DNA from: Haliotis rubra
Lineage: Eukaryota
Reading direction: 5' to 3'
DNA: 64,000 nt
Assembly (NCBI RefSeq): GCF_003918875.1
Contig: NW_025765539.1
Coordinates: forward strand, 1 to 64,000
Shown here: positions 1 through 64,000 of the stretch, in pieces
Position numbering within the stretch: position 1 is the stretch's first letter
Layout of the letters: every line of letters starts with the position of its first letter
Notes under the pieces: model-generated
Told to the model about the DNA's origin: nothing
The model's input: only the letters and a program-made list of their open reading frames with translations
The model's database searches: none
Made by a program: the position numbers and the translations under genes

Positions 1-3000
1 CCCGCCAGTATGCGCCTGACGAGGAGCAGTCTTCGCGTTCGTCGTGGTTGTTATCCTCAATAGCCAAGTAGATCAACGAAGAAGTATATGTTATTCCCGA
101 TATTTGCGTCGTTTCGACAGCGACCACCCAAGATACGATAGCAAATGACGACGATACCATGAATAACTTCACAGGGAAACCGTTCTGCTATGGACAGTTG
201 CGAACAAAATTAAAGGTTCAATAGTTACACCGAATCCCGGCCCCTTTATTCGGTAGCGTAGCGTCAACGTCTTACGCGAAGATGGGTATTATGTTCAGAT
301 GACGTGTTAGCTATGAATGCAATAGATCATATCATAAACAAATTTCAGCCCACGTTAACCGCAGACATATCAAAACAACGTTATTTTATTATGTAAATCT
401 GACGTATGTAACGTATAACTTCAGGGCACCCAAAGCTGCCAAACGACTACCATAAGTTGCGTATTTGGTGATCAATAACATGAAGTTGGTGACAAAACAT
501 GCTCATCACTCCAGGTGTCGAAATATTCTTCAAGAATGTAATCGTACCAGTACCGTGATTCAAGTAAATTACGTGAAGAATAACAAATCACATTGTCGAC
601 TGAACGTTATTTGTGCGAAGAATAACAATACTTTTGATATGAGTCGTCGTTAGACGGTGGTATATCGCCGTAATAGAATATGCGTTGATGCCGTGGATTT
701 ATTGAATACTTCCCTTCGTCGTCCGATTGCATGATCATTCAGATCAAACATATACCGTTGATATTATTGTACCACTCCACGATGGTTAAAACCTTTCTCT
801 ACGTAATACCGTTATGAGTTCCGATTTCCAAATTCCGCCCCCATCTGCTCATTATAATCGAATTTTTCCGGATCATACAGATTCGGGTAAGCTGATAATT
901 ATCCAACCAACACGCCCGAAGGTCTATCCTCGATTTGTCATAAGCCGTTCAATATCAAATCCATTTGATATATTGCATTCCGTACTGTTAGAATTGACAG
1001 CCAAAAGAACACGCAATGGGTCATCAATATCAATGGTCAATAATAATATGCTCATTAGCGTAACCAACGCCGTGTCGCCATATGCTGCCAATCAAAATAC
1101 CGTAATTAAAACGAACGAGCGTGCCAGTAAGATGAGCCGTTTACGAGTCATGAACGCATTGATTCAAAGTCTTCGTTTCGCTGTTTTTAACCGAGACACG
1201 ACGTTCGCTGAATCGACCCGTGAAGATCCGCCACGGATCTTCAGCGCCCGTCGTCAGCCGTTTGCCGACATATCATCGCATTCTTCGATTGCGTAACCGA
1301 TGTTTATAACGGATCGTTGCGACATTATCACGCGTCTGAATATCGTTAAACAGTCCGTCAACACCGAATCAACGTTTCAGCAGCACAAATAACGACATTA
1401 TACCACACCGTAACCATACCACATTGTTCATGCCGTAATCGTCATTCTTCACCGCATTTGGCGCACGTGGTTAGCGTCCAGACACGAACAGCCATTTGTG
1501 GGTTGGGCAACGATAATGAGAACAGCCTGAAGTTGATAAAGCAAATAACGGCGAAAACAGTGTCATCGTAATGCAGAAAACACGCATTGTTCGTTATCGA
1601 ACGTCAATGGTGAGCCCCAAAAGCTTCATCTTTAACAGCAGTTCGACATTCAAATCGCTAATTTGGCGTACTTTCATTTCGCTTTCCGACATTTTACGCC
1701 ATGAAAGCGACATTACCAGGCCAACATATAATTTTAAAAACGTGAGTTATTGAATTTAACGCGAACGAGATTCAACAGCATGACGAAGATACCAAATCTT
1801 GTTTTGGAATTCCAAATGATCAAAAGCGTTATTATTCGTTGACATAAAGCGACGCAATAAACTATCCATCCGTAATTGCGAGCGTCGGAGTAAACAACAT
1901 AAACATTCAATAATTATCACCGACCAGCGAGCCGACCATACAAGTCATTAGTTTGGCTTCGTTAGCTGGCGCGTGTCAGCAGCGCCAGCTCAACGAAATA
2001 ATACGGGTTAATGTGAGCTTCTCCATCCGCCAGTACCGACAGTTGTTTGATGCAACAATACTTCACTTCTGCTAATGTCATCGGTCGACAAAACCATTCC
2101 GTCTCCGTTGTTCCAAGAACATCATCGACATGCTGAGCATGACAACGCCAACGCCATAATATCACAACAACAATAATAAACGCAATTGAATAATGCATAT
2201 CAATAAAAACATTCCGCCCCGTTATTCAGTTGTTCATCATCAATAATAATATCATCGAATATCAATACAAATCATATCGAATAACATAGTAAAGAACTCT
2301 TCTAAAACCATTTTGCTTCATGTTATCGTTCCGGCCTCATCATATTCAACGGTAATTCTGCAGTTTCATTGCAATTCGATAGATTTATGCCGCGATCTTC
2401 AGTCTATATCTCCTCTTACTGTTCACGGTACCAATAAAATACTTTATGCGTACTATCGACAATTTCATCAAAGCGCCAGTAACAAGCGGTCGGCATCAAC
2501 GATGGTTCCATTGGCGAATCTGTGATGCTGAATACCTTTGAACAGCGCCCGACAACAGTATGACGGCAATTATCGACGATTGCGCACAACCGTTCAAAGA
2601 AGGAAGCGCGACGCTCGTAGGCCGATCTCGGCACGTTCACCATCATTGAACACGGCGGGAGTCATCGTCCGATTTACGATTATACACGTCGACACCAGTT
2701 TCGTTCTGCCTTTCGCATTACATTACGTTGGTTGTTGAACTTGCCAAGTTAATCTCCGACATATCAATTATCGGTTCATCTTCTGATTCAACCTCTGGAA
2801 GAATATCTTATTGCCGTGCGCAACAAAAGCGATCCTCGTTAGCACTCGCTCAATTGAACATACGCACACCTATAGTAGATCGCCTGCGATATCGCGAAGC
2901 CGATCAGGGAGAAGGCTGGCCGTCATAAAACACACCCGAATGCGGGAAGACGACGCAAAATGATTATCTTGAATGTTCATATTCACCAGTACCAACAACA

Positions 3001-6000
3001 TTCCGAGGGCTTGCCGAGATTACGCATATTCGGTTTTGTGTATGAAACAAGTTGTTTGCTTGAATGTTAACATCATAAAAACAAACATGGTTTGTCGCTT
3101 TCAGTCGCGACGCTATCGAAAACCGTTTTCCGACGGTCATTTTATGCGTACGCAAGCTGAAAGAATACCGTGCAAAACAATGCGCGCGCATACCGTTACT
3201 CGTCTATAATCAAAGGATCATTCGACGACCGCGATCCGGCCAGAACCGGTCTCGAAGAAGGGGAGTTCAGATTGTTAACGGGGATACCGTCGTATTCCCG
3301 CGAAATATCCGACATGGGCTCGACCAGCAACCATGCCAGTTAAAGAAAGACTAACGGGATCGGTGGTTGTGTTCGGTCTGTTGATCATTAACAATCGCAC
3401 CACTGCGTGACGACATGCCGTTGATCACTGACAATTGTTCCGCATCGAACATATAGACGTCGCGCTAGCCGGAATAGTCGAGGAAAGTTCGGTCAACAAC
3501 TTCAACCGGGGTTCAAATCAATTCAATCGGCTTCGTTCCGATATCTTCGCGAGCGAGCGAGCGAGCCAATCGTTAACATCATTACACGCGACGAACAGCT
3601 TCGATACAGAAACGAAACATATGCATATTATAAAGACCTCAACATCGGGCATCTCGTGATGGTTTTATTTATTCGCAAACACTGACTGTTGGCATTTGAT
3701 GGACGATTTACAGTCCGCCGATTCTTCGGGTCGGTCCAGTATCGCAGTCAATTCGGAATATGCTTCGAACATCGTTATCGATACCTTTTCGCGTAAGCAG
3801 CGGAATATTACCATTGACGAGGTCTTTAGCCATCCATAGTATCGACGCAGAACTTAAACGCTTTTGTGAGCTCAAAGATACCTGTTCACACGCTTTTCTG
3901 AAGAACAATGAATCGGTACTGCGGGATTCTGAGAAATGCTTCGAGTTCAGCGCCCGGATCACTTCCAGTGGTCTCTCCGGGACAACAACGAGCCATTGAT
4001 GGAAGTCCGCATTCATATTACCAATCATCTAACAGGTCGATGCCTGATGCATATTATCGCTGAACATAAAGTTGAATGGGGTGAGCGAATGAGCATGAAG
4101 TTTACGTCGCTGAAGGTTGTTCCAGTAATATCGAATGGCGGAGATCATAGCGGTCAATATCGACAAATCGATGTTAGAATGAACCCGATGGAGGTGACGA
4201 GCGCATGCTTTAAATATTAGTTGCCTTCATCATGAAGCTGATGGTGAGTTTCCAGTTAATTTTAACGAAATACCCGTTAAATCGTCATTACCGGCCCAGT
4301 TCCTTTAAGAGCAACACAAGTCATTTTTTATTTGTTTATTCATTATCATTTTTCCGAGATTTTCGTAAAATATGATGATCGCGCTCGAAAGTGGTACAAA
4401 GTCAGAATGCAGCAGATTCTCAGTAAAAATAATGCGTCTGTTTATGGTATATCGGGGACATGTCTGTTCTTTCGCGAATACTCCGAAAAGTCATCATTGA
4501 TATGCCACGAAGTTTCGTAAAGAAGCTTCATTGTAAACTGAATGTCATGCCGGAATAACGCATTTTATACCAGCTCTACGCCGCATGCCATAGACGCGAA
4601 AGAGCCGCGATTGCTGAATACGTAATGGGCAAAACAGCCTGTTGGTCGTTCATAACAGCGAAAACCAGTTCCTCAGCAGCTCAAGTCAGGGCACGGATGC
4701 ATCATCGTGATACCAGACTACTGGCTCCATTATTAAAGCTAGACGTACCATGATGTAACGTGTTTCATTATTCGATACGATCAGCACGTTCATATATCTC
4801 AAAATGCGGGCAGTTCAGCGCCAGCTGCCGGGCTCGTTCACGAAATAATTCAAGTCCGAACTCAATACGGGGCACAAACAGCGGAAGCCCACCGCGTCCT
4901 TCCATTACTGCCGGAAATACGCCGCTGGCGTAAAAACCGAAATAGAAGTCAAAGTCAGTCAAAGTCATATCTTCATTGAAAATATCAAAAACAAACACAC
5001 AGCCTGAACAATGGCTGTCAGTTCGAAGATCACTGCCGAGCGTATAGCATTTGTTTACATCGCAGCAAGCCATGCCGAGGCGACGTTGAATATTTTTCAT
5101 CTGCAACCGGCACTACGGAAACAGCCGGTACGCTGCTTGAGTTCGTAGCCTGAATCATCAACCAGCCCGATTGTGATTCTTTCAGAATATAGAGTTGGCG
5201 AGCAGAAATATTCCAGCGAGCGGCCGTTATTGCAGAAACGATGGACTGGTTTGCCTTCGGTAAGATTAAAGACGATAAGAGCAAAACCATAGTTACCAGA
5301 GGCCGAAGGAAGCCAGATGCAATATGCATACAACAAATCAATATATCCCGATCGTTGGAAAGTCATAAAACAAATTGGTTTAGCCGCCGCCAGCCTTCTG
5401 GGCAGCCAAGTCGTTGAAAGCAACGCGTCAATTCAACAATGAAAGCTCTTTTCACCCAAGCCAACGATAACTCTCATTGAATCGCGCTATGTTCGCAGTC
5501 CGCACTTCATCTATTGTTCATCCTGTCGATACGTAAAAACAATAATTCCAGGATTTTCCGCACATTTCGTTCAGACTTCGAGTTCGTTCGAGTTCGATTG
5601 CAGTTTGATTGTCATCATACGCGACGCATAATAATTCAAACAGCGCCGTATCAATCATTTTGACAGACGCAAAGTTACAACGATGTTTCTAAATTCAGCC
5701 GATAATATGACCGTAAACGGCATTCATCAGAGACCAAAATATTTGTGAAAACAGCTTCAACATTTCGTTATAATCGTCACCTAAAGATAACAAACATATG
5801 GGTATTCCTCAACCGTTTGATTTCCGCGAGTACTTTAGTTCGTTATGATTGACTCGAAGCTTCGCAGTCATTCCGGTATCCGTTAACAGTTTTAGCGGAA
5901 ATAGACGATCTATACCGTTTTCGCAGCAAAACGCGACGAATATGATATCAAACAGATCATAACATTTCACGACGTCATCTATAAACGTTTGTTCAACGAT

Positions 6001-9000
6001 TTCGTTAACATACCGTTACATTTCATTATCACCAATAATATTGTTCAAAGTCTTCACAAAGAATTATTGAAGAATGCCCATAGAAGACCCAACCAGTAGT
6101 TTGTTTCATCAAAGAACGAGGAAAAGCTCGTTTGAACTGATACCGTATTTCCAGTTCGACGTATATATCATGGCGAAATTCGGTATTGATCCATTTAGCA
6201 GCGACGAAGCAGAAGGAGCATTTGAAATTCGAGCGACCGTCTGTATGATTCAAGACGACCAGGGTATTGCGTTTGAAAATCGCTGATATCATTCTCGATC
6301 GCCGAACTTATTCCATCTGTTCAGGGTACAATACCAGACTAAGATATCGATCTCGGTTCCGTATCACAAAAACCGTTACGACAGTCGGTTCGTCCGGTTC
6401 GCAGACCGTTACCATCCGCCGCCCATTAATGGCCAGAAAGAGCACGATCTATCAAACATTTTAAACGAGTTCATTTCATTTGGCATTGCCTTATCATGTC
6501 GTCAATAAACCCTACGATCGCCGAAACATCGTTAAAATACGGTACTGATAGCCGGTATTTACCGAAGGATCGGTATCAAGTCGAGCAGACTACGTTACCG
6601 GCGAATTACGCGTCCAGTTCGGGTTGGCATAAAGAAGTCGCACATTACATTGATACACGCGTATCGCACGTCGTCATATGAGATGAAACATTGCCAACGA
6701 CGCCAAACTACCACATCAATTACCTCGCCGAGCCTGGCGACGACAGTTTGACCAGTTATCTGGCCTTGAAGAGTTTAAATCACCGCCATTTCGTCAGAAT
6801 TCGAATAGGGTAAATATAATTCATCAACCGTCTGAACTCGCACGAACACCTTTAGTAATCATCGTCAACAGGGACAATCGGGTTATCGCATCAACGGATT
6901 CCGGTATCAGTATCCGGTTCTTAATCGAGAAGTTTATCAGGATCGTAATATCATCATCAGCCAATGGAACCGATCTGGAAACAAATGAATAACGTTGTAC
7001 CAGAGCAGAACAAATATAATGGGAACAACGCAGATCAATAAATATCGCATTAGACCGTCAATGTATTGACGTACCCACTAAAATAGCAGGGTTCATAGCA
7101 GTTCGTAGATATCGTTAATGAAACTGTTTATTATCGGCATTGAGCCGACTTTGGAACAATATCAATGCAGATCTTATTGAACGCGTATTCGAAGGCAGAC
7201 TAGAAGACGATATTTTCCGAAAGCCAACATTTAACGATATCCGATAAAGCCGGTTAATAGTCCGGTATTGATTCAGTTGCCGACGGGGAGAACGGTGGCA
7301 GGTTGCGAAAGCCAAAATATTGTTTACGTCGCTGGCGAATACTGCTAATATCATAGTAACAGATGGGGAATATTCGGTGATGTATGAATCGTGCTTCATT
7401 CCAGATTCTCCCGACGTTCAGCCGTTGAAGCGGTAGTTCCGATTGTGTCGTAGATTCCGAAAGCCGGTCAAGATCTCGACATTCGACAAAGAATGCACCA
7501 ATGACAACCGTATGGATAAACACGTCTTTATCGGTTACGTAGTTAATCAACATTTTACCGTTATCGTTCATCGATTTAGGATTGCGTTTCGCTAATATGC
7601 CGTTGGTCTCACACCAACAAATGCCACGAATGGCTTGATAACCATGCGTAAATCGAATGTCAGCGAACATTACTTCAAAGTTTTCCAGATGTTCGGTCGC
7701 AGATAGAAACAAATACAGCATATTACATTTCGATTCTTCCGCGTCACCACGGAGCCGCAGAAGATGTAACTTCAAATCGGAAGAGTCGATGTTGTCGTCA
7801 TAATAGCGTAAACAGAAATCTCACCTAAACAATTCGTAAATGGCGTTCGAGATTTTCGTTTCGTCAGTCAGCCGAAAGGATCATGATAACCATTTCAAGA
7901 CTTTACCTCATTATGTTTTGTTTATGATTTACATCGCGTGATAACGGTTGACAACGAAATAAATATAACCATTACCTTCGTCAGATGAGCAGCCTTTGCC
8001 AACTTCCAGGTGTCAGGCACCATTGCTGAAAATATCGTGCCAGACGATTGCCGTTAACAGTATCGTTATCCGATTATACGAACCGAAACAATGAATACGA
8101 CTTCCGGCATCAATGGGGTCAGCGACGTCACTTTCAAACCTTTATCAAAGACGAAGTCGAGGCGATTGTTGACGCACGCACCATAAAATGTTCACGCAGT
8201 TGCGTTCGTGCTGGGGAAACGGGCTGCGCAAATAATGATCGTCGTTTGTTATCGATTCACCAACGCAGCGTCGCGGAAAACTATGAACGCCGTTGCCGTG
8301 GTGCCAACAGTTCGCCTGCACCAGTTCAGGAAAAGTTGCGTAGTTTGGTTAATTCGAAACATGATTTGACCTCGCGAAGATCCGGAACGCCATAACTATC
8401 GGTTGTTAAGACTGATGTCGCAAGAAGCACGGATCGGGTGACGGTTCACAGACGATATCATGCCGCCGATCACGATAAATAACCGACATTTGAGCAGATC
8501 GCCGTATAGCTGGAATATTGCCGAGCGCGGCGCAACCAAACTGGTCAATCAATCGGAACATGATTTAAAGTCGAAGGCTATTGGCACATAGGTTATATAA
8601 TAGACAGAACAGTACCATCAAAGATCGACCGACTTCAGTTTGTTTTACGCCAGCAAATATCTCCAGCAATCACGGTATCGACAAAATAATCGATTTACCG
8701 GAAGCCTTTGCGAAGACGAACGTTTCAACCATTAAAGTTGCCTGTCGTTCTATTGTCAAAGAAACACATCATTCTTCAAGTGAAAACAACGATATATTCT
8801 CTGTTCGGTCTGATTCAGTGTTTTCGTTCGACTGAGCGAATATAGCTCATTAATCATTAACCACCGGCCCCTAATCAGTACGGGCCGCATTTGGTAAATG
8901 TATTCACGATATTAAAACGCATCGCCATCTAATTGAAGGTCAGTTGAAACCACGACAATGCCATCTCTCGACAGACTTCATCAAAAGTTTATGTAACAAT

Positions 9001-45962: not shown

Positions 45963-46018
<56 letters not shown>
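45963..46018. repeat. (CA)n microsatellite
   Basis: Directly visible. Confidence 0.97.
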
Positions 46019-46655: not shown

Positions 46656-46733
46656 ATCAAACAGGAGATTGTGTGCGTGTCTGGGGCTTTAAGTCGACCG
46701 TTTCAGATTAATGTATATCAACGTATATCGATC

Positions 46734-48773: not shown

Positions 48774-49317
48774 GACATAACTGGTCAATGGATATAGCAT
48801 ATACATATATAGTACCGATGTGTCGATACCTAGTTATCTGTAAAGCTTCAAATCAATTAGGTATTGACACTGACCATGATAAAAACACGCTGTAGAATTA
48901 CGTTAGGGAATCATTGGAAGTAAATGACCGTGGAGAAAGCTGTAGGACGTACACGGAGTCAGGGTGATTACCTTGAGGTAATGCAGATGTAAAGAACTGG
49001 ATTGTTGGATTGTTTGACCACGTTACATTGGTGTCATATGGTACCTATGTGAAGTCGTGAATATCTGAGAATGACACCTATAGATTGTTCGAGCTAGTGT
49101 TCCTATGGCCTGGAGAAAGCTATTTAAGGGAAGAATACATAACATTTTAACAAAGTTGTGTTCTTTGGATGTTACAGTTCGACAGGAGACCGTACTGATT
49201 TAATATCGGTGTCGAATCACAAACTATACTTGGAAACCTGGCACTGTCCAATATTGGTGTGTTGTGAGGATGAATCCACTATCTACAAATGTTTGGAGGG
49301 TACAGTGTAGTTCTGTA

Positions 49318-52300: not shown

Positions 52301-55300
52301 TTTGAAACGTAGTATGTTTCAGAAATGGTAATTGCGCAAATTGTATGTTAACATGAGATCAATTTCCCTTTAAAACAGGCAGAAACTAATGAATCATTAA
52401 TTTGCTTTTCATTTTGATACGTCCGACAAACATTCAGTTATTCTGTGATCCCAAAATGAATATTGCTGGTGTTAGCAGTTTCGCGAGCAGGAAAACTGCG
52501 AGTTTCATGAAGCATTTATTGCACACTACAAGATTAAACTAACAATGTTAACCTGTTTCCACAGTATATTACTAAGCTAACAATCCCATCCTGTTTTTTA
52601 ATAGCACACTATATATGTTGTCTTTCTAGGGGGTGAGGGGGTTATCGTTTTACGCCGAGCTCAGCAATTTTCGTAAGAGGTGACTAAGAATTGCAGGTGG
52701 TCAGACTCACTGACTTGGTTGACATATATTGTATCCCAACTGCTCATGTTGTTGATCATTGGATTGTCTGGTCCAGATATGATTATTTGCAAATAAAACC
52801 AGACCTACTGACAAGTCGACATTTACATGTGCAATACACACTAAGCTGATGCTTACTCGCTTGCAAAAACACTTTAAAACGCTACCATACAGTTTAGAAT
52901 CAGGTCTCAAGATGCGTGAATATTTATGTAAGAAGAACAATCTGGCACTGTATTTCTATATTAAATTATCTGTTCACTCAGGCATTATATTGTAATGCGC
53001 TTTCCAAACTTCGTGATAGAAAATATGTCTAGGATTTCGATTTTCTCCAAATTTCGTGATAGACAATATGTGAATTTCAGGAGAGTGAATAAGTGAGTTT
53101 AGTTTACGCCGCACTAAGCAATGTTCCAGTTATATGGCGGCAGTCTGTAATAATCGAGTCTGGACCAGACAATCCAGTGATCAACAGCATGAGCATCGAT
53201 CTGCGCAATTGGGAACCGATGACATGAATTTCAGAAGAAGGCGGTTTATTACAACGCGATTATTTGTCGCGTTTGTATCTGTACGATACATATAATGTAT
53301 TAAAGATAACAAATTTGCACTCGGGTTGATTGATAATTATGTTCTGGGGCTGAGCCAAAGACGTAACACATTTCAACAGTTCCCCTCAACGCCGATAAGC
53401 CTTCGTCAATAATATCAGGATATTGGGCCTGTCAGTCTCGCGAGACGCTACGTCCGGTACTAGCTGGTTCACGGCTCCCTTTGCGCGCGCCAACTTGCGA
53501 TATGCGAGACGGGGCCCAGCTTACTTTCGGTACCATATTTCCGGTGACAGACGTATATTCAAGACCCAGTTCTGGTACCAAATTGGGGATTAGATCAGAA
53601 ACTTGTTATTCCAAGGAATATCCGATCGTTAAGTACTGACAACTGACAACCATGAGACCATTCGAAAAGGTATGAAACGTTGTTTGTCACCTGACAACCA
53701 TGAGACCATTCGAAAAGGTATGAAACGTTGTTTGTCACCGGAAGTACTAAGGTCTCGCGAAGTGCCGTGACCTACTTACAGGCCCTATTGTCCCAGTTAC
53801 AAGACCTTCTCTTAGCCGCCCAAAAGGTGATCCACAGAAGCTACAACGTCGTGGTTCAAATGGAAATGGTTTCCCCAGTCTACCACGTCTCTTTGTCAAA
53901 ATTGCACCATGCAATTGCCTAAAACATGCAGCATAATGTGTTCTGTTTTGGAAGATAATGATGCCGCTAGGACTCTCCCAGCCTTCCAAAACACGGAGGC
54001 CCAAACGTTTCCAGGTGATAGGTATTTTGCCTTCTATGGTTGTAGGGATGTCAAAAGTTCCACTTCATGGTTGATTGGATTTATTGCCCTTAGTAGTGAA
54101 CCCAGGTCTCATCCATAGTCACAAATAGTTGCAAGAGCATTGTTGATCAGCTTCAAGCAGATTTGGATTATCATGACAGATGCTATGCCTAGCGCGATTT
54201 TGATCAGATATCTGAATTTTGAAACCCAACATTGCCAATGCAATAATGGAACGGACCACTGAACAATGCTGATTTATATTTTCCGGCCAGTCATCCACAT
54301 ATTGAAGTTGTTTGTTGGGTTGGTTTGGTGTTTAGCTATACTGCGGCGGTCTATATATAATCGAGTCTGGGCCAGACAACTCAGTGATCAAGATCATAAG
54401 CATCAATCTAATTGGGATACAAGGAAATGTGTCAACCTAGTCAGCGAGCCTGACACCTGATCCAGTTAAACGCCTCTTACAAGCATGGATGGCTAAAGAC
54501 CAATTCTAACCCGGCTGATCGCGGGTACATATCGACTATTCACTGGATGGTTTCTTGTCTTGCTAACGTTCCTTCCAGGACGGGTATTATCTTGCACATT
54601 TCCTTTCCCTAGTGTTGTGCGCATACATCTAATATTTTTTTCGTATCAAGCCTTTATATACAGTCAACTCTCGTTAATCCGACACTTGTGGTTGCAGAGA
54701 AATATGTCGGATTAACGAAAATGTCGGATTAATGTATTTGTACTCGTGACAGACATCTTGTGATGAAAACTCAGGTCGGTTGTAAACATTTTATACAGCT
54801 CGCTCTACTGTTATTTCTTGATTAAATCGTCTCAATTAATTATCCTGTGTTCCTAACTAACAAGAGTGATGTTCACCGACATCGGTGTCAAGCAGCCAGT
54901 AAGGCATACGCTAATTACCACTCACGTGTGATTGTTTGTATACGGTCGGGTTATCCGACCGGCTGTGTGATTGTCGGATTAACGAATGTTTTTACAATGT
55001 ATTTACAATAATCAGTTGCTATAAGTACATGATCACTCCACATTCTTCAATTTGTCTATTTTCCAAACATCACAGACCTCTGCCTGTTTTACAGAATTGA
55101 CGCAAGGTTTCGTATATATACCTCTAAGAGCGAGTGAGTGAGTTTAGTTTTACGCCGCACTCAGCAATATTCCAGCTATATGGCGGCGGTCTGTAAATAA
55201 TCGAGTCTGGACCAGACAATCCAGTGATCAACAGCATGGGCATCGATCTGCTCATTTGGGAACCCATGACATGTGTCAACCAAGTCAGCGAGCCTGACCA

Positions 55301-55492
55301 CCCGATCCCGTAAGTTGCCTCTTACGACAAGCATGGGTTACTGAAGATCAATATTCTTACCCGGACCTTCACGGGTATACCTCTAAGAGATCATGTAACC
55401 ACAACATAACGTTTGACTTCCGTCGTGAGACAGGATATTGACTGTTCCGTTTTAGCACTGCATACTTTTCACTCATTGTTTCAGATATCTAG
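49318..55492 (+). CDS. Spliced gene for a secreted protein of about 360 aa (signal peptide, Cys-rich PAN-like module, EGF, fibrinogen-N-like motif, uncharacterised domain). Exons 49318-49609, 50611-50707, 51109-51792, 55485-55492
   Basis: All three introns are GT-AG with matching phases (0, 1, 1). Exon 1: MYSCSIFSLLLIFSDMTSISA-FVIQQSPKCRIDY...CSRVTCGSQCGAPC...; it needs one base removed, probably in the C-run at about 49490-49495. Exon 2: VTSCTNEGTAAADGTCVCPVGFMGHLCQ (EGF). Exon 3: TCYDIYQRDSSSADGEYTL...VYCRF...FLGF...GYSAN...NCDSKSHSYFTFF...EIHFGGCGG...GVKY. Exon 4: DI-stop, then AATAAA at about 55659. The start codon and last exon are the least certain parts. Confidence 0.75.
50060..50290 (+). 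mobile_element. L1/Tx1-type LINE ORF2 3' fragment (intronic)
   Basis: ILFG...FILLGKYYLYKCK....PN...F...L..RYSIEK is the typical Tx1/L1 ORF2 C-terminus. Confidence 0.7.
50903..51051 (+). mobile_element. Decayed tRNA-derived SINE (same family as 39206-39366)
   Basis: gggtagccaagtggttaaagtgttcgctcgtc...gatttcccacatgggtacaatgtgtg...aatattgctaaa. Confidence 0.8.
52670..52792 (+). mobile_element. Decayed non-tRNA SINE fragment
   Basis: tcgtaagaggtgactaa...ggtggtcagactcactgacttggttgaca...ggattgtctggtccaga. Confidence 0.75.
53081..53225 (-). mobile_element. 5'-truncated non-tRNA SINE with TSD
   Basis: Near-identical to the 3' part of 55131-55375 and flanked by tgaatttcag on both sides. Confidence 0.85.
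53643..53738. repeat. Perfect 48-bp tandem duplication (unrelated to the large array)
   Basis: ctgacaaccatgagaccattcgaaaaggtatgaaacgttgtttgtcac x2. Confidence 0.95.
54307..54525 (-). mobile_element. Older, decayed non-tRNA SINE copy
   Basis: gcggcggtctatatataatcgagtctgggccagacaa...gtcagcgagcctgac...attctaacccgg. Confidence 0.8.
54661..55015. mobile_element. Tc1/mariner (pogo-like) MITE, one end only
   Basis: TA followed by cagtcaactctcgttaatccgacac, with repeated tgtcggattaa motifs. No matching right TIR seen. Confidence 0.6.
55131..55375 (-). mobile_element. Full-length non-tRNA SINE with predicted pseudoknot head
   Basis: Perfect 14-bp TSD tatacctctaagag (55117-55130, 55376-55389). 5' end cccgtgaaggtccgggtaagaatattgatcttcag, 3' tail ggcgtaaaactaa(actc)n. 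Confidence 0.92.
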
Positions 55493-56663
55493 TACCACGG
55501 TAGAGCAGTGCAAAGAAACGGACACCAGTACCGAACACAGAGCGCATTGACAGCTATAGATGTTATTGATTTAGACAACAATATCACAAGTATCGCTTAT
55601 TGGAACAGAAACATCGATAGAGGCGTTGTACTGCTTCAAACAATCATTCCAATGATGAAATAAATCAATTAGCGATTAAACCCATCTTATTGTCTGTTCC
55701 CTCAGGGCGGAGAGGTTTTTTTGGTTAGTTTGAGTTTCACTCGAGGGTAGCGCCATTGTGGTTTGTCTAAAACTTGGATTATGTAAAAAATATTAACACT
55801 TTTTAATCCATTGTTCATTACATTTTGTGACTTATACATGTTTCTTAATGGAACCTAGGACATGTTTCTTAAGTTAGTCTTATTATAAATCTAAATGTTT
55901 AGGGGGGAATATACCAACTTTCGCTAAATTCACCGTGTATATTGTGCATAAATGAGGTATTTGGCACTTACTCATTATCTCCCATTAGCTAGCCTACAGC
56001 CCAGTACTGTTATCGTACTGCCCTTGTAGTGCTCTACGTCGTGTCTTATTCAAGCCAATGAATTTGTGAGTCGGTGATAGTCTCCTTTTCCCAAATAGCT
56101 TTATCGCCCACTGTGTTTTGCACTACATCGTATGTTATTAGGACAGCAAGCGAAGTAAAGTCAAGCCTTCAACTTGCACCGTATATTTTGACATTCCAGC
56201 TGCTGATTTTGACCGTGAAAACCTCGCCGCGTTACTAAATTAGAGAAGAAACATGTTGAAATGGAAACGAAACGAAACAAATGATATTAATTTATTTTCT
56301 GCAAACTTGATTTATACATTTTTTCAGATCTGTTACAGTATTTCCGATTATTCATGGTGCAAAATCATGTTACATATGTCGAACCCAGTAATTAATTGCC
56401 AGTTAATTTGGAAAGTACTTCGTATTTTGAAACTGATACGATCACTACGTCGATTTTTAGTTGGTTGTAGTCATGCCAGCTGGAAGCTGGAAGAGTCTAT
56501 ATCAATACGTTGCTATGTATATAATGAACCAGAGGTGGTTCTCCATAAAACTTAACCTCTCTATGCTTTAAAATGGTGTATATCAACATTCAGTTGCGGC
56601 TTCATGATGCAATATATTTCTTCAGGTTTTTCTTTTGTAAGTTACATTATGAAACTATTTTGA

Positions 56664-56755
56664 GTGAGTGAGTGAGTGTAGTTTTACGCCACACTCAGCA
56701 CTATTCCAGCATGGGTTAATGAAGGCCAATATTCTAACCCGGACCTTCACGGGTC
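56664..56755 (-). mobile_element. 92-bp internally deleted mini-copy of the non-tRNA SINE
   Basis: 12-bp TSD aaactattttga (56652-56663, 56756-56767). Only the 5' head and 3' tail are retained. Confidence 0.9.
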
Positions 56756-57058
56756 AAACTATTTTGAACATATTCTCCTGACCATATGCTTGCTTTCCAT
56801 CAACACGTCCAAAAGGAAAGACATTTCCACTTATTAAAATATCCATCACTATTGGTAACTACATGTAATTGTATAACAGCGGTCATTCTTATCACTCTGT
56901 AATAGTCATAACCACTTGATACCATGGATTTGTATTTTTCTTTTCATGTTTGATATATTTGTGTAACATACTCATTTTATTATTATCAAGAAGAAAATAG
57001 TATTTTCTTATAATACATTCTATACGGCAAACGTCTGTAAAAGACTACAAAACATTGA

Positions 57059-57076
57059 ACACACACACACACACGA

Positions 57077-57118
<42 letters not shown>
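57059..57118. repeat. (CA)n(TA)n compound microsatellite
   Basis: Directly visible. Confidence 0.97.
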
Positions 57119-57119
<1 letters not shown>

Positions 57120-57452
57120 AAGAAAGTGATGAGAATACCGAGCGTACAGTAGTACATATATAAGAAAAAGTTTCTGAAATAATCACACGACACGGATCTT
57201 CTCCAACATGTTTCACTTTTATCTTCAGGGAGAAGTGATTACAGTTAAACGGATTATGTTATGACGTCAATTTGTCATGACGTCACAATGCAACTGTATA
57301 CAAATGTTGTGACGCGGCGTTGCCATGACGTCACATTGGCGGCTTTATATTGACAGTACTAGTAGCAGTAGTATAAGGGCCTTTATGGCGGCAAGATCTA
57401 TTTTTAGCTATGGGGCTTTACAGGGTCAAAATCTATTGTTAGACTTCACATA

Positions 57453-57603
57453 GTCTATTTTTAGATGATGAGTCACTGCTCTCTATTGTATATTGAGATC
57501 TATGATGTGAACACCTGGTGTGTCTATTTTTAGATGATGAGTCACTGTTCTCTATTGTATATTTAGATCTATGGTGTGAAAACCTGGTGTGTCTATTTTT
57601 AGA
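57453..57603. repeat. 69-bp tandem repeat, about 2.2 copies
   Basis: gtctatttttaga at 57453, 57522 and 57591. Confidence 0.92.
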
Positions 57604-58669
57604 ATAATATAAAGTCCACCAAACAGCCTCATTCACAGCTCAGTCACTACACCTAGTGATTACACATTGTGGATATACCAGTGTATTTCTTATGGGATTA
57701 CTAATCAACCTGACATTATACTGTGTGATTCACTGGGTTTATATTTTCAATAGCTCAGCCTCTCAACTACACATCTCTGGAGTAATTAAACATGGTGTAT
57801 ATTTCTCACTTGATTACATAACATCTTTGGATTAATGGAGTGACTACACATTATGCTACCAGTGTATTTCTCTTTTATCTCAAAGCGAGCGCCCGTTATC
57901 GCAGTATCAATTCCCGTCTGACTAACTATAACTATTAAAAATGTGAAATTCAAATGTATGCAACGTCCTACCTTCAGTCCTTACATTGTAACACAGAATA
58001 CATTGTAACACAGATTAAGATTTACATCATCATCAGATTGAACGAGTGTTGGGGATAAAGACTAGTGTACATGAAGTCAACTCACCTCTGTTCATCATAT
58101 CCATTGTTGAGGCAAACAGTGGTGGTAAATCTAGATGTTTAGAGGGTTGGAACAAGTAACCCATTCATGTGAAGAAACAGATTGATTCATACTGTACTCC
58201 AACAATGAATGACTCATTTGCCCACCCGTAAGTCCGACCTACAGCCATTCAAAGCTATGTTTACGGAAGGGAATCCCTCTCCCACCCAAGCATGAAGATT
58301 AAGAAAACAAGCGTATAATGGAGGAAAAATAAAATAACTTCAAAAACATGTTACCGAGTGTCCATGTTAATACTTTCTTTTAATTTGCGACAGCCTCCGA
58401 TCGAGGTGTGCCATGTTCATTCTACCATAACATTGCCTCTCCCTACGTTCAATGACCCGAGAAGCATGACGGCCTTCACGCCCATTGAAGAAACCAGGTC
58501 CTAGATCGCGTCCCCCGCCGCCATTTTGAAAAAAATGATAAATATATAGATTTAAACAAATAACAAAGTCCTAGCCATGCCCGCCGATGAAAAAAACTGA
58601 GTAAAATGTTGAAACTCATAGCGAAATCACTCACAGCATACTTCTCACCAAAATATCCCATGTAGATCC

Positions 58670-58912
58670 CATGAACTTACTTTAAAATCCCACATAATCA
58701 TATGAATAAACACAGCCGATACACACAGAGAATACAACCTATAGATAGTTGATTACACATGACTCACATATGCCATGAGCTTACTTTAAAACTCACACAC
58801 AATCACATGAATAAACACAGCCCGATACTCACACACAGGATACGACCGATAGAAAGTTGACATGACTCCCGTTTGCCACGAATCATTAAATCCCAACACA
58901 ATAAACACAGTC
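58670..58912. repeat. Imperfect ~105-bp tandem duplication
   Basis: catga(a/g)cttactttaaaa...atgaataaacacagcc...gata...agttga...catgactc occurs twice, plus a partial third copy. Confidence 0.8.
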
Positions 58913-59685
58913 CAATCATAATCAGAACCTTTCCCTAGATTCATCGTTTTTTTCTAAACTATAGCTTGCATAAAACCAATTTTAGTGCGTAGATGTACTC
59001 GCATTGTTAACATGTGTACTCACGATACTGTCGTCAACAACATTATTCACACAATACGTTCATACGCAAACATACTCACAAATTAGAATAGAGAATGATC
59101 CATCACATAAATTCCACACCTACTGTGCTGTTTTAAACCGTCATGAAACCGCCAGAATACCTAAACACGCACAGCACAACATACCGGCTGCACACGGCGG
59201 TGAACAAAGAGCATTCAAGCTTGGCGCCAACAGCCCCTGCCTAAAACCGGTCTGTCAAACTGGATCGCAAAAGGGTCTATCAAACCGGTTCGCAAACGGT
59301 TCTGACTCAAAATGGCTACATGTCCAAACCGGCTACATGTCCAAAACGGCTTTGTAGACCAAAAATGGCTTTACAACACTAGTGTAATAGCTTATGTATT
59401 TATAAACCGTTTATATATATGTATATTCATTACAGATCATTAAAATTGTTGTTGTATTCAATACAATGAACTGAAACAGTTGCTATCTTCAATACCATGA
59501 ACTGAAACAGTGGTTATCTTGTATTCAATCAACAGGAATGACGTTTAAACTGAAACTTGTATGTCTGATAATAGTATGAGGAGGTTAGGAATACGTGGAT
59601 TCAGTGAAATAGGGTTGAAATTGGTATTATAAAAACCAAGAATTGTACAACAGTTGTCTTATGTCAATCCTCCAGCAATACAATC

Positions 59686-59862
59686 AGTGAGTTTAGTACA
59701 CTGTTAGCAGCGTTATGGCGGTGGTCTGTACATAACTGCCCAGACAATCCAGTGTTCAACAGCATGAACGTCATTCTACACCATGTGCCATGTGTCAGCC
59801 AGCGAGCCTGACCACTCGATCCCGTTAGTCGCCTCTTATGACAAGCATGGGTTACTGAAGGG
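59686..59862 (-). mobile_element. Decayed non-tRNA SINE copy
   Basis: ccagacaatccagtg...agcgagcctgaccactcgatcccgttagtcgcctcttatgacaagcatgggttactgaag. Confidence 0.8.
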
Positions 59863-59991
59863 TAACCCAGAGGTACAATACATTAAGAAACAAGAGAGAT
59901 ATACAGATTTCATTGTTTATTAGTCTGTTTCGAATGAGTAGACATTAGGATAGGAGCTCTCCCAAATGCCTACTTTACATCTGTTGTCTTA

Positions 59992-61407
59992 TTACCCTTC
60001 ATCATCATCCACCTGTCCTTCACTCTCTTCATCAGATGTTATGTCTTCATCTTCAGTCATGCCTTCTGACCCAAGACTTATATTGGTACAATTTTGAAAG
60101 CACTTCATGATACATATTATTTGTGTCTTTTACTCGTTTCAGTATTCCTTGTGTCTTTGGACCATCCTGCATATGGTACAGATAAGTAATAAATCGGGCA
60201 TACGTCTCTTTAAACGTGCTCCAGATCAATTTGTTCAGTTTGACTTGAATCATGTCTTCGTTTAAACCTCTTTTATGTACAGCTGTCGCTTTCTCATCCA
60301 AAAGTCTTTATTCAGCTCACGCTGTACGTGAATACATTTGTCTTATACCTTGCTCTTCGAGATCAACCATCTTATTTTTCCTGTTGTGTGTGACATCGCT
60401 TAATGATTCAACATCATCGTCCTCATTTTCCATTTCAGGACATTGTTTATCGTGTAAATGTCTTTGTAAGTTATGGTTAGTGCTAAACACTTGACCACAA
60501 TAGTCACAATCCACCAGAGGACGTGGTCTCTTCACAGGTGAGAAGTTGTTGTCTTCCTCCCACTGCCTTTTCACTTGGGGTATCCCAGGAGGACCCACTG
60601 AAGACGTTTCGGGACACCAGTTTCTTCTGTGTTTTTGCAAATCTTGCACATCTTGAAACACGAGTCCACAGGCATCACAAGATGGCATGGTTGAGAGGTT
60701 TTCTTCACACGTCTGCTCACGCTGAACATCTAACTCGGACTGAATTGTCCTGGCTTGAGGTGTCCTTTAAACTGAATGCATTGGGACAAAGTCGCCTATG
60801 GGGAGGTGTTTGGGGTTTTAGATCAACCAACAAGTAGCCATAAGGCTTCTGGGTAGCCCTTTGAAACGGCTCCATGAAATGGTCTGTGTTACCTGGATAC
60901 ATTTGCCTCGCCAAAGTCATGATGGGTTGTTGATCGATAGGGTTGTTGAACAGAAGCAGATAATGACAGTTTCTTCGTTGTGTGGGATCCTTACTGAAAT
61001 ACAAATTCTGGTTCAAGGCTTATCACTGAGAGATTACGATGATGACTTCCTTCCGTAAAACAGATCTGTAATGCGTGGATCTTTGCTGGCAGTAGACATT
61101 AAGTCATCGAGGATAACCACGCTCACCACACTGGGGTCTAGAAATGCATCCTTTTCGAGATCAGAAGGAATGCCTTGATGAAATTCCACATAGGGATAAA
61201 CATGGGTTTGAATGGCATTATACAAGGGCTGCCATCGTTTGTAGAGCCATATAATATGTTCAGGATAAGGTTTAATGTTCATCCTTTCTAGAATCTGTTT
61301 CACTAAGTAGGTTTTCCCACAGGAGGTTGGTCCTGAGACAATCATGGTGAAGGGGTGAATCAGTCTACATTCTTCCAATGACTGGGTAATACTTTCTGAT
61401 GAATGTG

Positions 61408-61442
<35 letters not shown>

Positions 61443-61475
61443 GGTTGTGGAGGAGGAGGAGGAGAGGGGGGTGAC

Positions 61476-61510
<35 letters not shown>

Positions 61511-61603
61511 GATATCTTTTGGATGTTTCTGTCTTCTATGTCTCAACATATTGTCTGTCCTGGAAAAAGTCATATAGCACATGGGACACGTTGTTGACTG
61601 CAT
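59992..61603 (-). pseudogene. Frameshifted ORF of about 530 aa: C2H2 finger, polyQ/P tract, Polinton/Maverick-type (A32/FtsK-like) packaging ATPase, two more zinc fingers, helical region, acidic tail
   Basis: Walker A GPTSCGKT (in HPFTMIVSGPTSCGKT) and Walker B VVILDDLM. After removing two single-base insertions (about 61058 and 61019) it reads DLFTEGSHHRNLSVIALNQNLY...NCHYLLLFNNPIDQQ...LARQMYP...ATQKPYGYLLVDL, the canonical Polinton ATPase motifs. One further indel (about 60765) joins it to MPSCDACGLVFQDVQDLQKHRRNWC and CDYCGQVFSTNHNLQRH. Ends EDEDITSDEESEGQVDDDEG-stop, with AATAAA at about 59916-59921. Confidence 0.85.
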
Positions 61604-61649
61604 GGTGGTCCGAGTCTAAATGGCAGGGAACCATGTCTACTGACTGCTT

Positions 61650-61996
61650 TTATCTAAAAGTCGCCTTCCGTTTCTTCATGGGAAACTGGGAGGAACTTCC
61701 AGCTTTAGTTTCCCTTTCTTCTGCATCTGAATAAGAGCCTTGGCTTGTTCGACCACTTGTTGAGTAGGGTAACGAAATTAATCTTTAGGTTGTTCTGTGG
61801 TTTCTGGTTTTTGTTTGTCTTTTCTTCCACTCTGATCATACAGTTCCAAATATCGATCGACAGACAACATGGCAGATTTTCTCCTCCACGTGTTATAGAA
61901 TGATAAGGGTCTCCTTTCCCTTCAGCCCTGAGCATGTAATACCGCGGTCCATTTTTCGGCATCCGCACGTAAGAGTTTGTATCGTGGATTATTCAT
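61650..61996 (-). pseudogene. Small frameshifted ORF resembling a Polinton-associated small protein
   Basis: Reconstructed across indels: ..DAEKW.RYYML.AEGKG...YDQSGRKDKQKPETTEQPKINFVTPTQQVVEQAKALIQMQKKGK...KKRKATFR. I recall the W..y...AEGK and VTPTQQ.VEQAK motifs from invertebrate Polinton small ORFs. TATATAA lies upstream at about 62073-62079. Confidence 0.55.
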
Positions 61997-62254
61997 GATG
62001 AAAACGGCCTGAGGTGATGCGTCACTGTCACTGGTCCACGGCTAAATGAAGTTAGATAGCCCTTGTGGCCTGTTATATAGATATATTCATTGACCTTGGT
62101 ATAGCTTTCAACATCGCTGCCAGGATGGTTCGGATGCACTACTATGACAAACTAAACCGGTGTACCAGGTGTACTAAGCCCATGCTCTGTTATACTATAC
62201 ATAGACAACCAAGGCAGACATACTCTTAACATTGATTTATTTCCAATAGTCACA

Positions 62255-62632
62255 CATTTTACATCACACTCTTGGTTGCAAATCCACATGACTACCCCAA
62301 CGGGTCACCTCTTTCTGAGGTAATTCCCACCAGGGCCAAACACGGACAATCTGGAGACCATTTTTCATGTTCGCCCAGGGATCATCATCTACTTCCCAGT
62401 TCTTGAGAACGAGACCACATTGAAAACACTTGCAAGTGTCCCTCTGATTAAGTACACAAATCCTGCCTGAGCCATGTGACTAGGACTCTGTTTCATTTGC
62501 ACTGGCCAGTCTTTAAACGAATCGAAGTCTTTTCTGGAATGAAGTCCATTCAGTCTTGATTGCACAGCAACGGCAACGACAGTCTTGTCGAATGGGTAAT
62601 GTCCACACACATCCCTGATGCCACAGGGACAT
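62255..62632 (-). pseudogene. Intronless single-BIR (IAP-like) gene with frameshifts
   Basis: Joined across 3 single-base indels: KRLDSFKDWPVQMKQSPSHMAQAGFVYLxQRDTCKCFQCGLVLKNWEVDDDPWxEHEKWSPDCPCL, which fits the BIR consensus RLxSFxxWP...AxAGF...CxxC...W...P..EH....PxC. AATAAA follows at about 62236-62241. Confidence 0.88.
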
Positions 62633-64000
62633 ATATGTCCTTCCCTTCAACCCTCAATTTCAAGTCCAATAAAAATCAAAATATCCCACGCACACAAATA
62701 CACTTCACAGTTTCGAATTCTGCAGGAAATTTCCTTTTTCTTGATGCCATCCACTATTCTTTTAGACAAGGCTCAAGTGCTGAAAATGACCTTTCAAAAT
62801 TGGCTTCATCGAAAATGTCGCCATTTTTGACACAGTACGAAATCGCGATTCACAGCGTTATTTGCTGTATGTTTTGAAATGTGAAAATCGGATAATTACT
62901 GGGAGTATTGAATTTCAAAAATAACATATTCATGATCACTGATATCAGTTTTACATGAAATCGCTAATTATAATTCTGAAACGTTGCCGATGAATCTAGA
63001 ATCGGTTGGGATGTTTTCAAAAATGCACTTACACGAACACCGTAGAGCGCTTTCCGCCATATTGATAGTGTTTACAAAATCACGTTTCGCGAAAGCCGGT
63101 ATTGAGACGCCTATTACATCACGTATATTTCATATTCAGCTTCGAAAAATGCATCACTGAATTCCCCATACATTTTAGAATCAAATTGCAACTGGTCTGT
63201 GTCACCAATAACAACTGTCTAGATAAAATGAGACGAAACATATTGGGTGTGAAAACGAACGCTGTGCTTGAAAGACTGCGTTTCTCTGAAATGTAAACAA
63301 AGACAAATTCCGATTTTACACTGCGTAGCATTTTCTGAATTTTTCAACATTCATCCGTCTATTCATTGCTTGCAATGGCTCAATACTTTTTGAATATGCA
63401 TGGAAAGAGTATCGTAGCAAGAAATAGGAAATTATAAATAGATACAATGCAATGATTTGATAATTCATAAGAAATTGTCAAAGTTTCCGTGCAGCGTGAC
63501 GCCATGACTGACGCAAAATCACGCAGAACGACAACGGTAATTATCTGCATTTCTGGCCTTTTCTCTTACTTATAGTGAAAACGATAAAAACATATAACAA
63601 TACACAGATAGTCAGAATCATTCTGATTACTTACATCTCATATTTATGTACAAACGATCCCTGAATCAATGGAAGGGTCCTCGCAAAATCCTGTGTACCC
63701 TTGTCAGCAAAGCCGCCATTTTGTAAGAAATCGGTCAGCGGTAGTGATGTCATACGTCAACATTGTTGTACATATTAGGCAATTTCTTTGAGGTGAAGGT
63801 CGGTTGAAAAAGAGTAAACACAATCGCCCAATCCTTCCGATTACACTGTCAGTATTATGGTGTATATTTTGCGTATAGTTCAGATACTTTTTTCATGAAA
63901 CTGACTTCAGTATCTACATTTAGCCTTGTTCAATATCATATCATACGTGCATATAGGGTTTACGGTGTTTTATTCTTTGAAAGTTTTTGAGTGTTTGAAT

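What the first reader, a model, noticed from the sequence alone, without database searches (positions are those of the whole stretch)
1..64000. The window is a giant fold-back: the left 34 kb is a noisy, ~30% compressed reverse complement of the right side
Seen: at least seven collinear inverted anchors, with a left/right distance ratio of about 0.67-0.73, centred at about 33,990. Established: nanopore reads that run from a template strand into its complement give a second half that is low quality and deletion-rich. Inference: one such read was built into the contig. Over half the window is then not real genome, and 1-12,215 is a ghost of roughly the next 17 kb to the right. Uniform compression across exons, SINEs and the array is not how an old inverted duplication decays.
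Basis: partly seen in the sequence, partly recalled or inferred. Interest (0 to 1): 0.75.

Follow-up and report, generated by a model that had tools for sequence, protein, structure and literature searches.

The report
Fold-back nanopore read at contig end
The first 34 kb of this abalone genome contig is not real genome but the badly mis-read second half of one nanopore read that turned round and read the opposite strand, so it should be trimmed from the public assembly.

Summary
Bases 12,216-33,999 are a collinear, noisy, shortened reverse complement of 34,000-64,000: 358 collinear 12-mer seeds against 11-25 in shuffles. Per true base the left arm has 59% matches, 8% mismatches and 33% deletions, and its length is 0.56-0.86 of the right arm's in 1-kb bins.

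The differences look like read errors, not mutations. A>G outnumbers its complement T>C by 722 to 183. CA is called CG at 36-45% of CAC/CAG sites. Only 439 of 1,396 left-arm CpGs are true. Exons, SINE-like repeats and satellites are all hit.

Bases 1-12,215 have no partner in the window but carry the same signature: 24 of 24 windows are classed with the noisy arm.

The window is bases 1-64,000 of Haliotis rubra contig QXJH01001582.1, so the noisy arm is a terminal overhang. That assembly used nanopore reads, five libraries being 2D hairpin kits (LSK-208), all base-called with Albacore 2.3.3.

I could not test read support, or fetch bases 64,001-82,000 to test the ghost directly. A real palindrome seen through the same nanopore failure is not strictly excluded. 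The contig is not human.

The parts
1..12215 (.). 'Ghost': the outer part of the mis-called second half of the fold-back read. Its true partner lies beyond the window, predicted at record bases 64,001 to about 79,000-82,000.
   Evidence: It has the same CpG o/e (1.34-1.79) and CT<AG asymmetry as the mirrored part in nearly every 1-kb bin. 24 of 24 500-nt windows were classed as noisy by a 3-mer classifier with 100% cross-validated accuracy. It has no blastn match to the rest of the window, E. coli or phages. It holds two weak SINE-like fragments, at 3,349-3,454 and 8,495-8,549. It starts at the contig end.
12216..32019 (-). Noisy, shortened reverse complement of 37,028-64,000.
   Evidence: Seed chain and piecewise alignment give match 0.589, mismatch 0.082, deletion 0.329 and insertion 0.063 per right-arm base.
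13650..14290 (.). Stretch inside the noisy arm with about 330 extra unalignable bases relative to right 61,900-62,300. Read as junk base calls.
   Evidence: Left spans of 123-198 nt per 100 right-arm bases, with only scattered 16-33-nt insertions and no single block.
32020..33999 (-). Noisy reverse complement of the 48-bp satellite array.
   Evidence: Unit-consensus scores are 14-21 here against 32-41 in the clean array. The outer array edge 37,027 maps to about 32,020. Motif spacing has a median of about 36-37 nt against 48.
33999..34000 (.). Pivot: the orientation switch from noisy reverse-complement units to clean forward units. The molecule's true turn-round point may lie up to about 0.45 kb to the right.
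   Evidence: Sequence read directly. About 54 noisy units against 63 clean units (the estimate is biased). No hairpin or adapter remnant was found.
34000..37027 (+). Clean 48-bp tandem satellite, about 61-63 copies. Real genome, and probably where the true assembly ended.
   Evidence: Tandem Repeats Finder: period 48, 54.9-61 copies, 88-92% matches.
37028..64000 (+). Clean right arm: real, polished genome. It holds the annotated gene LOC124271189, SINE-like repeats and a Polinton-like ATPase fragment.
   Evidence: Strand-symmetric dinucleotides and CpG o/e of 0.81. The ORF is 100% identical to the H. rubra protein P0052. Window 41,318-62,575 is identical to record 41,318-62,575.

Best explanation
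One long nanopore read ran along one strand of a DNA fragment of roughly 45-50 kb. It travelled leftwards in window terms, from about 80 kb down to the 48-bp satellite at about 34 kb. At the fragment end it turned round and continued along the complementary strand. The likeliest cause is a 2D-kit hairpin, since five of the 19 libraries were LSK-208 and all were base-called with Albacore 2.3.3. Alternatively the complement strand followed the template into the pore, or the fold-back was created during library preparation.

While the second strand passes the pore, the first re-pairs with it on the far side. This changes translocation, so bases are skipped and mis-called. The second half therefore comes out about 30% shorter and only about 59% correct.

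The assembler's real contig ended in the satellite. This read overhung the end and was kept as 34 kb of contig. Neither Racon (nanopore reads) nor Pilon (Illumina reads) could align anything to such noisy sequence, so it stayed unpolished.

Shown here: the mirror geometry, the error model, the contig-end position and the sequencing chemistry. Inferred: that a single read is responsible, the hairpin as the specific cause, and the lack of read support.
For: Geometry: 358-422 collinear inverted seeds against 11-25 by chance, one pivot at 33,999/34,000, and base 64,000 mirrored at 12,216.

Error model: 33% deletions in every 1-kb bin (0.20-0.47). Deletion events (length 1: 787, length 2: 500, length 3: 336, and so on) outnumber the 2,244 substitutions. 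A>G outnumbers T>C by 722 to 183 (p=9e-88), and G>A outnumbers C>T by 225 to 127. The A>G rate is 0.45 in CAG and 0.36 in CAC, against 0.02-0.06 after G. Of 1,396 left-arm CpGs only 439 are true; 282 come from CA->CG and 59 from TG->CG. Left-arm dinucleotides break strand symmetry (CT 0.50-0.54 against AG 0.81-0.88) whereas the right arm is symmetric.

No sparing of function: exons lose 19-50% of their bases, and 68-83% of deletion events are not multiples of 3.

Context: the window is bases 1-64,000 of H. rubra QXJH01001582.1, so the noisy arm is the contig terminus. The assembly used nanopore reads from LSK-108 and LSK-208 libraries, Albacore 2.3.3, wtdbg/DBG2OLC, Racon and Pilon. LSK-208 is the 2D kit with a hairpin linker, and base-callers that ignore the hairpin call the whole molecule as one 1D read. 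Lower quality of the complement strand is attributed to re-zipping. Post-junction regions are low quality, have missed bases and are consistently shorter than the pre-junction region.
Against: No hairpin or Y-adapter remnant scores above background at the pivot or at the contig end. Polishing inside the repetitive array or Porechop trimming could have removed one.

The clean array seems to hold about 9 more units than the noisy one. The pivot in the contig may therefore not be the exact turn-round point.

No reads were available, so single-read origin and zero short-read depth are inferred. The partner of 1-12,215 could not be fetched.

I did not verify that Albacore 2.3.3 treats 2D data as 1D; that rests and my own knowledge.
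Confidence: 0.88

Rival explanations
1. The abalone genome really contains a large inverted duplication (palindrome) with its centre in the 48-bp satellite and arms of 45 kb or more. The left arm is then real in topology, but its sequence is mis-called because nanopore reads fail after any inversion junction. The identical arms were collapsed by the assembler.
For: PMC7229812 shows the same low-quality, shortened post-junction behaviour at validated real inverted duplications. With identical arms, clean reads would all map to the clean arm, so an unpolished noisy overhang at a contig end is also expected under this model. The satellite unit contains the short palindrome ACATGT, which could seed a fold-back.
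Against: Five of 19 libraries were 2D hairpin preparations, in which every complete read is a fold-back, so the prior for an artefact is far higher. No spacer or unique centre is present. Nothing in the window requires a real palindrome.
Confidence: 0.07
2. The left arm is an old, genuinely diverged inverted duplicate of the right arm that has decayed by mutation with a deletion bias.
For: The arms are collinear and inverted.
Against: Substitutions are strongly strand-asymmetric (A>G 722 against T>C 183). CpGs are created rather than lost, and on one strand only. Small deletions outnumber substitutions and remove a third of all bases in every 1-kb bin. Left-arm dinucleotide frequencies break strand symmetry. 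There are no large indels or transposon insertions between the arms; the largest gaps are 41-76 nt in low-complexity runs. The same signature continues unchanged to the contig end.
Confidence: 0.01
3. The fold-back comes from another source: a palindromic chimera from whole-genome amplification, a PacBio-type missed adapter, or a consensus error by the assembler, rather than a nanopore template-complement read.
For: Palindromic chimeric long reads are known from amplified DNA (10.1101/173872, listed).
Against: The published methods list only native nanopore ligation libraries and Illumina data, with no amplification and no PacBio. By established knowledge, PacBio errors are insertion-rich and equal on both arms. 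Here one arm is clean and the other has 33% deletions. An amplification palindrome read by nanopore would in any case show the same post-junction failure, so this overlaps with the main explanation.
Confidence: 0.03

Closest known systems
Nanopore sequencing failure after inverted-duplication junctions (Spealman, Burrell & Gresham, NAR 2020, PMC7229812)
   Same: Normal quality before the junction. After it come low quality, wrong and missed bases, and a region consistently shorter than the preceding complementary region. The length of the bad region follows the length of the preceding arm. Here the bad arm is 0.56-0.86 of the length of the good arm and runs for the whole mirrored length.
   Different: That paper describes reads at real structural variants, mapped to a reference. 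Here such a read has been built into a published contig as 34 kb of terminal sequence, and the junction is most likely a library hairpin rather than a genomic inversion.
2D (hairpin) nanopore reads base-called as one 1D read (White et al., F1000Res 2017, PMC5600009; review PMC5770995)
   Same: The SQK-LSK208 kit joins template and complement with a hairpin. When the base-caller ignores the hairpin, the whole molecule is called as a 1D read. The complement strand has lower quality. The H. rubra project used five LSK-208 libraries and Albacore 2.3.3.
   Different: No hairpin sequence is detectable at the pivot here. That paper dealt with amplicons under 1 kb, not a fragment of about 48 kb.
Palindromic chimeric long reads after whole-genome amplification, or from missed SMRTbell adapters (Pacasus, 10.1101/173872)
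   Same: A read whose second half is the reverse complement of the first. It misleads assemblers if it is not split.
   Different: Those palindromes have arms of similar quality. No amplification or PacBio data were used for this assembly.
Genuine large genomic palindromes or inverted duplications
   Same: Two inverted, collinear arms meeting at one centre.
   Different: Real arms differ by strand-symmetric substitutions and few indels. Here the differences are strand-asymmetric, context-specific and deletion-dominated.

Membership tests
Nanopore fold-back (template-to-complement) read built into an assembly | Two arms that are reverse complements, collinear over their whole length, meeting at one pivot without a unique spacer | tested here: met
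   A 422-seed chain, a pivot at 33,999/34,000, and 64,000 mirrored at 12,216.
Nanopore fold-back (template-to-complement) read built into an assembly | One arm of much lower accuracy, with missed bases, and shorter than the other | tested here: met
   Match 0.589, deletion 0.329, length ratio 0.56-0.86 in all 1-kb bins.
Nanopore fold-back (template-to-complement) read built into an assembly | Differences behave as single-strand read errors: strand-asymmetric and dependent on sequence context | tested here: met
   A>G 722 against T>C 183, p=9e-88. CA->CG at 36-45% of CAC/CAG sites. CT o/e 0.50 against AG 0.85.
Nanopore fold-back (template-to-complement) read built into an assembly | The assembly was made from nanopore reads, with a chemistry that can yield such reads | tested here: met
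   H. rubra GCA_003918875.1: LSK-108 and LSK-208 (2D hairpin) libraries, Albacore 2.3.3.
Nanopore fold-back (template-to-complement) read built into an assembly | The noisy arm lies where a single read can extend a contig, that is, at a contig end | tested here: met
   Window coordinate equals record coordinate (offset 0), so the noisy arm is bases 1-33,999 of the record.
Nanopore fold-back (template-to-complement) read built into an assembly | Hairpin or adapter sequence at the turn-round point | tested here: inconclusive
   Hairpin_1, Hairpin_2 and the Y-adapter (from the PMC5600009 supplement) score at background at 33,700-34,300 and at 1-300. Polishing within the array or trimming could have erased them.
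Nanopore fold-back (template-to-complement) read built into an assembly | No accurate reads support the noisy arm, and one read spans the pivot | not testable with these tools
   No read data are available. Look-ups of clean-arm control ORFs in public short-read assemblies found nothing, so that route has no power.
Real inverted duplication or palindrome | Arm divergence by ordinary mutation: strand-symmetric substitutions, indels rarer than substitutions, CpG loss | tested here: not met
   Asymmetric substitutions, more deletion events than substitutions, and CpG gain. This rules out the left-arm sequence being real, but not a real topology hidden behind read failure.
Real inverted duplication or palindrome | Doubled read depth on the collapsed arm, and junction-spanning reads from independent molecules | not testable with these tools
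   No read data.
PacBio missed-adapter palindromic read | Both arms of similar raw quality, with insertion-rich errors, in an assembly that used PacBio data | tested here: not met
   One arm is clean. The other has 33% deletions against 6% insertions. There is no PacBio data in the project.

The most novel reading that the evidence does not exclude
The abalone genome truly carries a giant palindrome (arms of 45 kb or more) centred in a 48-bp satellite. The assembler collapsed its arms, and the only trace left is a junction-spanning nanopore read whose second arm was mis-called by the known inverted-duplicate failure.
Probability: 0.06. Interest if true: 0.4.

Novelty: not a real feature. Interest (0 to 1): 0.15.

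Why it matters
Bases 1-33,999 of QXJH01001582.1, 53% of this window, are junk in a public reference genome that carries an NCBI gene annotation. Junk of this kind inflates assembly size, can seed false 'inverted duplications' or odd CpG-rich 'islands', and can mislead repeat and synteny analyses.

Five of the project's 19 libraries were 2D hairpin preparations, so similar overhangs are probably present at other contig ends of this assembly and of other assemblies from 2016-2019.

The signature measured here needs no reads and could serve as a cheap screen: a self-inverted match with a length ratio of about 0.6-0.85, CpG o/e above 1.3 in a CpG-depleted genome, and CT/AG strand asymmetry.

Biologically there is nothing new. 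The real content is a 48-bp satellite, SINE-like repeats, one annotated gene and a broken Polinton-like ATPase.

Tried and rejected
(1) I tried to fetch the true partner of 1-12,215, record bases 64,001-82,000. The look-up of encoding contigs reaches only 10 kb either side of an annotated gene. The only gene in reach (LOC124271189, record 51,318-52,575) gave record 41,318-62,575. No other gene on the record is known to me, so the direct ghost test could not be run.

(2) I tried to use public short-read assemblies as an independent check. Exact look-ups of three clean-arm ORFs found nothing. The absence of left-arm ORFs would therefore mean nothing, and I did not try it.

(3) I tested a contaminant origin for the ghost. 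It has no blastn match to E. coli genomes or phages, including lambda-type control DNA.

(4) I looked for a hairpin or adapter remnant at the pivot or contig end and found none above background.

(5) I used the SINE-like profile as a probe of the noisy arm. Only 2 of about 8 mirrored copies were recovered, at E about 1, so its two ghost hits are weak support only.

(6) The apparent local expansion (ratio 1.16) near left 12,351-13,789 came from a spurious 12-mer anchor.

(7) Rfam and tRNA scans found nothing.

(8) Counting units in the noisy array to fix the pivot was too noisy for more than a rough estimate.

House rules: the window has no N. The contig is abalone, not human. The broken ATPase gene was searched as two separate pieces and left broken.
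Full report
**What is in the sequence**

The window has no N and falls into two compositional halves. Bases 1 to about 32,000 have CpG observed/expected of 1.2-2.0 in every 1-kb bin. The right side has 0.5-1.2, and a 48-bp satellite between them has almost no CpG.

A self-comparison with 11-14-mer seeds shows that inverted matches between the halves pile up on one line, with a left/right distance ratio of 0.65-0.75. They chain into 422 collinear seeds from (12,351; 63,797) to (33,914; 34,410). With the satellite excluded, the best chain has 358 seeds. Base or 6-mer shuffles give 11-25, 200-nt block shuffles give 84-99, and the direct orientation gives 18.

The orientation switch is at 33,999/34,000. 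To the left are noisy reverse-complement units of the 48-bp satellite. To the right is the clean forward array, 34,000-37,027, with about 61-63 copies. Base 64,000 mirrors to left 12,216.

**How the two arms differ**

I aligned the reverse complement of the left arm to the unique right arm (37,168-63,792). Per right-arm base there are 58.9% matches, 8.2% mismatches and 32.9% deletions, with insertions equal to 6.3%.

Every 1-kb bin is shortened: deletions run 0.20-0.47 and the length ratio 0.56-0.86. Deletion events (length 1: 787, length 2: 500, length 3: 336, and so on) outnumber the 2,244 substitutions. The largest single gaps are 41-76 nt, in (CA)n and poly-glutamine-coding runs.

An apparent local expansion came from one spurious seed. 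What is really there is about 330 extra, unalignable bases spread over left 13,650-14,290.

**The differences are read errors, not mutations**

- Substitutions are strongly strand-asymmetric. A>G (right arm to reverse-complemented left arm) occurs 722 times against 183 for its complement T>C (p=9e-88). G>A occurs 225 times against 127 for C>T. The other four classes are symmetric.
- A>G depends on context. Its rate is 0.45 in CAG and 0.36 in CAC, against 0.02-0.06 after G.
- As a result CpGs are created. Of 1,396 CpGs in the aligned left arm, only 439 are true. 282 come from CA->CG, only 59 from the complementary TG->CG, and 221 from a C and a G joined by a deletion.
- Left-arm dinucleotides break strand symmetry (CT 0.50-0.54 against AG 0.81-0.88), whereas the right arm is symmetric.
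- Function is not spared. The annotated exon loses 50% of its bases, the ATPase ORFs 25-39%, SINE-like copies 23-67% and (CA)n 84%. Between 68% and 83% of deletion events are not multiples of three.

Mutation acting on double-stranded DNA does not produce one-strand CpG gain or a uniform one-third loss of bases. A base-caller working on one mis-sampled strand does.

**The outer 12 kb**

Bases 1-12,215 match nothing else in the window, nor E. coli genomes or phages. They carry the same signature as the mirrored part, with no change at 12,215.

A 3-mer classifier trained on mirrored-noisy against clean windows reaches 100% cross-validated accuracy. It puts 24 of 24 ghost windows in the noisy class and 0 of 53 reverse-complemented clean windows.

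A profile of the SINE-like family has low power on noisy sequence. It recovers 2 of about 8 mirrored copies, both at the predicted places, at E about 1. It finds two fragments in the ghost, at 3,349-3,454 and 8,495-8,549.

**Where the window comes from**

The ORF at 51,216-51,857 is 100% identical to Haliotis rubra LOC124271189 (P0052), on a record of 149,179 bases. The fetched locus, QXJH01001582.1 bases 41,318-62,575 of GCA_003918875.1, is identical to window 41,318-62,575. The window is therefore bases 1-64,000 of that contig, and the noisy arm is its physical end. The contig is from an abalone, not a human.

The assembly paper (PMC6774278) reports the following:
- base-calling with Albacore 2.3.3 and trimming with Porechop;
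- assembly with wtdbg 1.2.8 and DBG2OLC;
- two rounds of Racon, one of Pilon, and merging with QuickMerge.

SQK-LSK208 is the 2D ligation kit, which joins the two strands with a hairpin. When base-callers ignore the hairpin they call the whole molecule as one 1D read (PMC5600009). The 2D complement strand was known to be of lower quality, which is attributed to re-zipping (PMC5770995).

Spealman et al. (PMC7229812) showed that after an inversion junction nanopore reads have low quality and missed bases. The affected region is consistently shorter than the preceding arm, and they attribute this to faster translocation as the arms pair on the far side of the pore.

**Mechanism**

One read of a fragment of about 45-50 kb ran from about 80 kb down to the satellite, turned round, and read the complement back out. 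That second half was mis-called and shortened. The real contig ended in the satellite, and the read's overhang was kept as 34 kb of contig. Nothing could be aligned to it for polishing.

Shown: the geometry, the error model, the contig-end position and the chemistry. Inferred: single-read origin, the hairpin as the cause, and the absence of read support.

**Weak points**

- No hairpin or adapter remnant is detectable at the pivot or the contig end.
- The clean array seems to hold about 9 more units than the noisy one. The true turn may therefore lie up to about 0.45 kb right of 34,000, and the leftmost clean units may have been written by polishing with other array reads (the estimate is biased).
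- The Spealman effect also occurs at real inverted duplications, whose identical arms an assembler would collapse. The window alone cannot exclude a real palindrome. The 2D libraries make it unlikely; I give it about 0.06-0.07.

**What could not be done**

- The partner of the ghost (record 64,001-82,000) is out of reach of the tools, because only one annotated gene lies within range.
- Public short-read assemblies gave no control hits.
- No reads are available.
- The broken Polinton-like ATPase was searched as two separate ORFs and left as it is.

**Verdict**

This is an assembly artefact, not a biological feature. It matters only for curation of the reference, and the first 33,999 bases of the contig should be trimmed.

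Noticed in passing
window 60,317-61,603 (- strand): A Polinton/Maverick-like fragment in the clean arm. It holds an ORF with an N-terminal C2H2 zinc finger, a poly-glutamine/proline run and a Pox_A32/adenovirus-IVa2-type packaging ATPase, whose closest relatives are Mytilus proteins at 45-70% identity. The ATPase is split. Residues 1-166 of relative P0005 align to ORF 61,034-61,603 and residues 180-261 to ORF 60,717-61,016 in another frame, so there is a frame break near 61,016-61,050. A further C2H2 zinc-finger ORF follows at 60,317-60,688. No other Polinton genes were seen nearby.
   Followed up: partly
window 34,000-37,027: The 48-bp satellite (16 codons, no stops in several frames) gives ORFs of 724-775 aa on both strands. 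These are products of the repeat, not genes. The unit contains the palindrome ACATGT. The first 1 kb, especially 34,225-34,500 and 34,750-35,000, has more irregular units than the rest.
   Followed up: partly
window 45,499-45,741 and 46,734-47,016: Two arrays of a 21-bp unit in inverted orientation (85-95% identical), about 1 kb apart, flanking a (CA)28 run at 45,963-46,018. They look like the terminal inverted repeat arrays of a foldback-type transposon.
   Followed up: no
window 39,791-39,919; 40,696-40,789; 42,488-42,733; 52,645-52,821; 53,087-53,270; 54,303-54,537; 55,133-55,388; 59,682-59,889: An interspersed repeat family of about 230-250 bp (SINE-like), with at least 8 copies in 27 kb at 72-91% identity. 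No tRNA-like head was found by ARAGORN and there is no Rfam match.
   Followed up: partly
window 42,018-42,420: A 102-bp tandem repeat (3.9 copies) directly upstream of a SINE-like copy. Its units match positions 43-140 of the SINE-like profile weakly, which suggests a small satellite derived from that element.
   Followed up: no
window 51,216-51,857 (record gene 51,318-52,575): The only annotated gene in reach, LOC124271189 (161 aa, no Pfam domain). It has an 81%-identical, longer paralogue (P0053, 344 aa) on a 2.26-Mb contig. The ORF in the window extends beyond the annotated product, which covers 74% of the ORF, so the gene model may be truncated.
   Followed up: no
window 13,650-14,290: Inside the noisy arm, about 330 more bases than the partner (61,900-62,300) can account for, spread as many 16-33-nt insertions. 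Possibly a stall or a burst of invented base calls.
   Followed up: partly
window 40,156-40,473 (+): A 105-aa ORF containing an 'RYIDD' motif that recalls reverse-transcriptase motif C. It had no Pfam hit at E<=0.01, so this remains an impression only.
   Followed up: no
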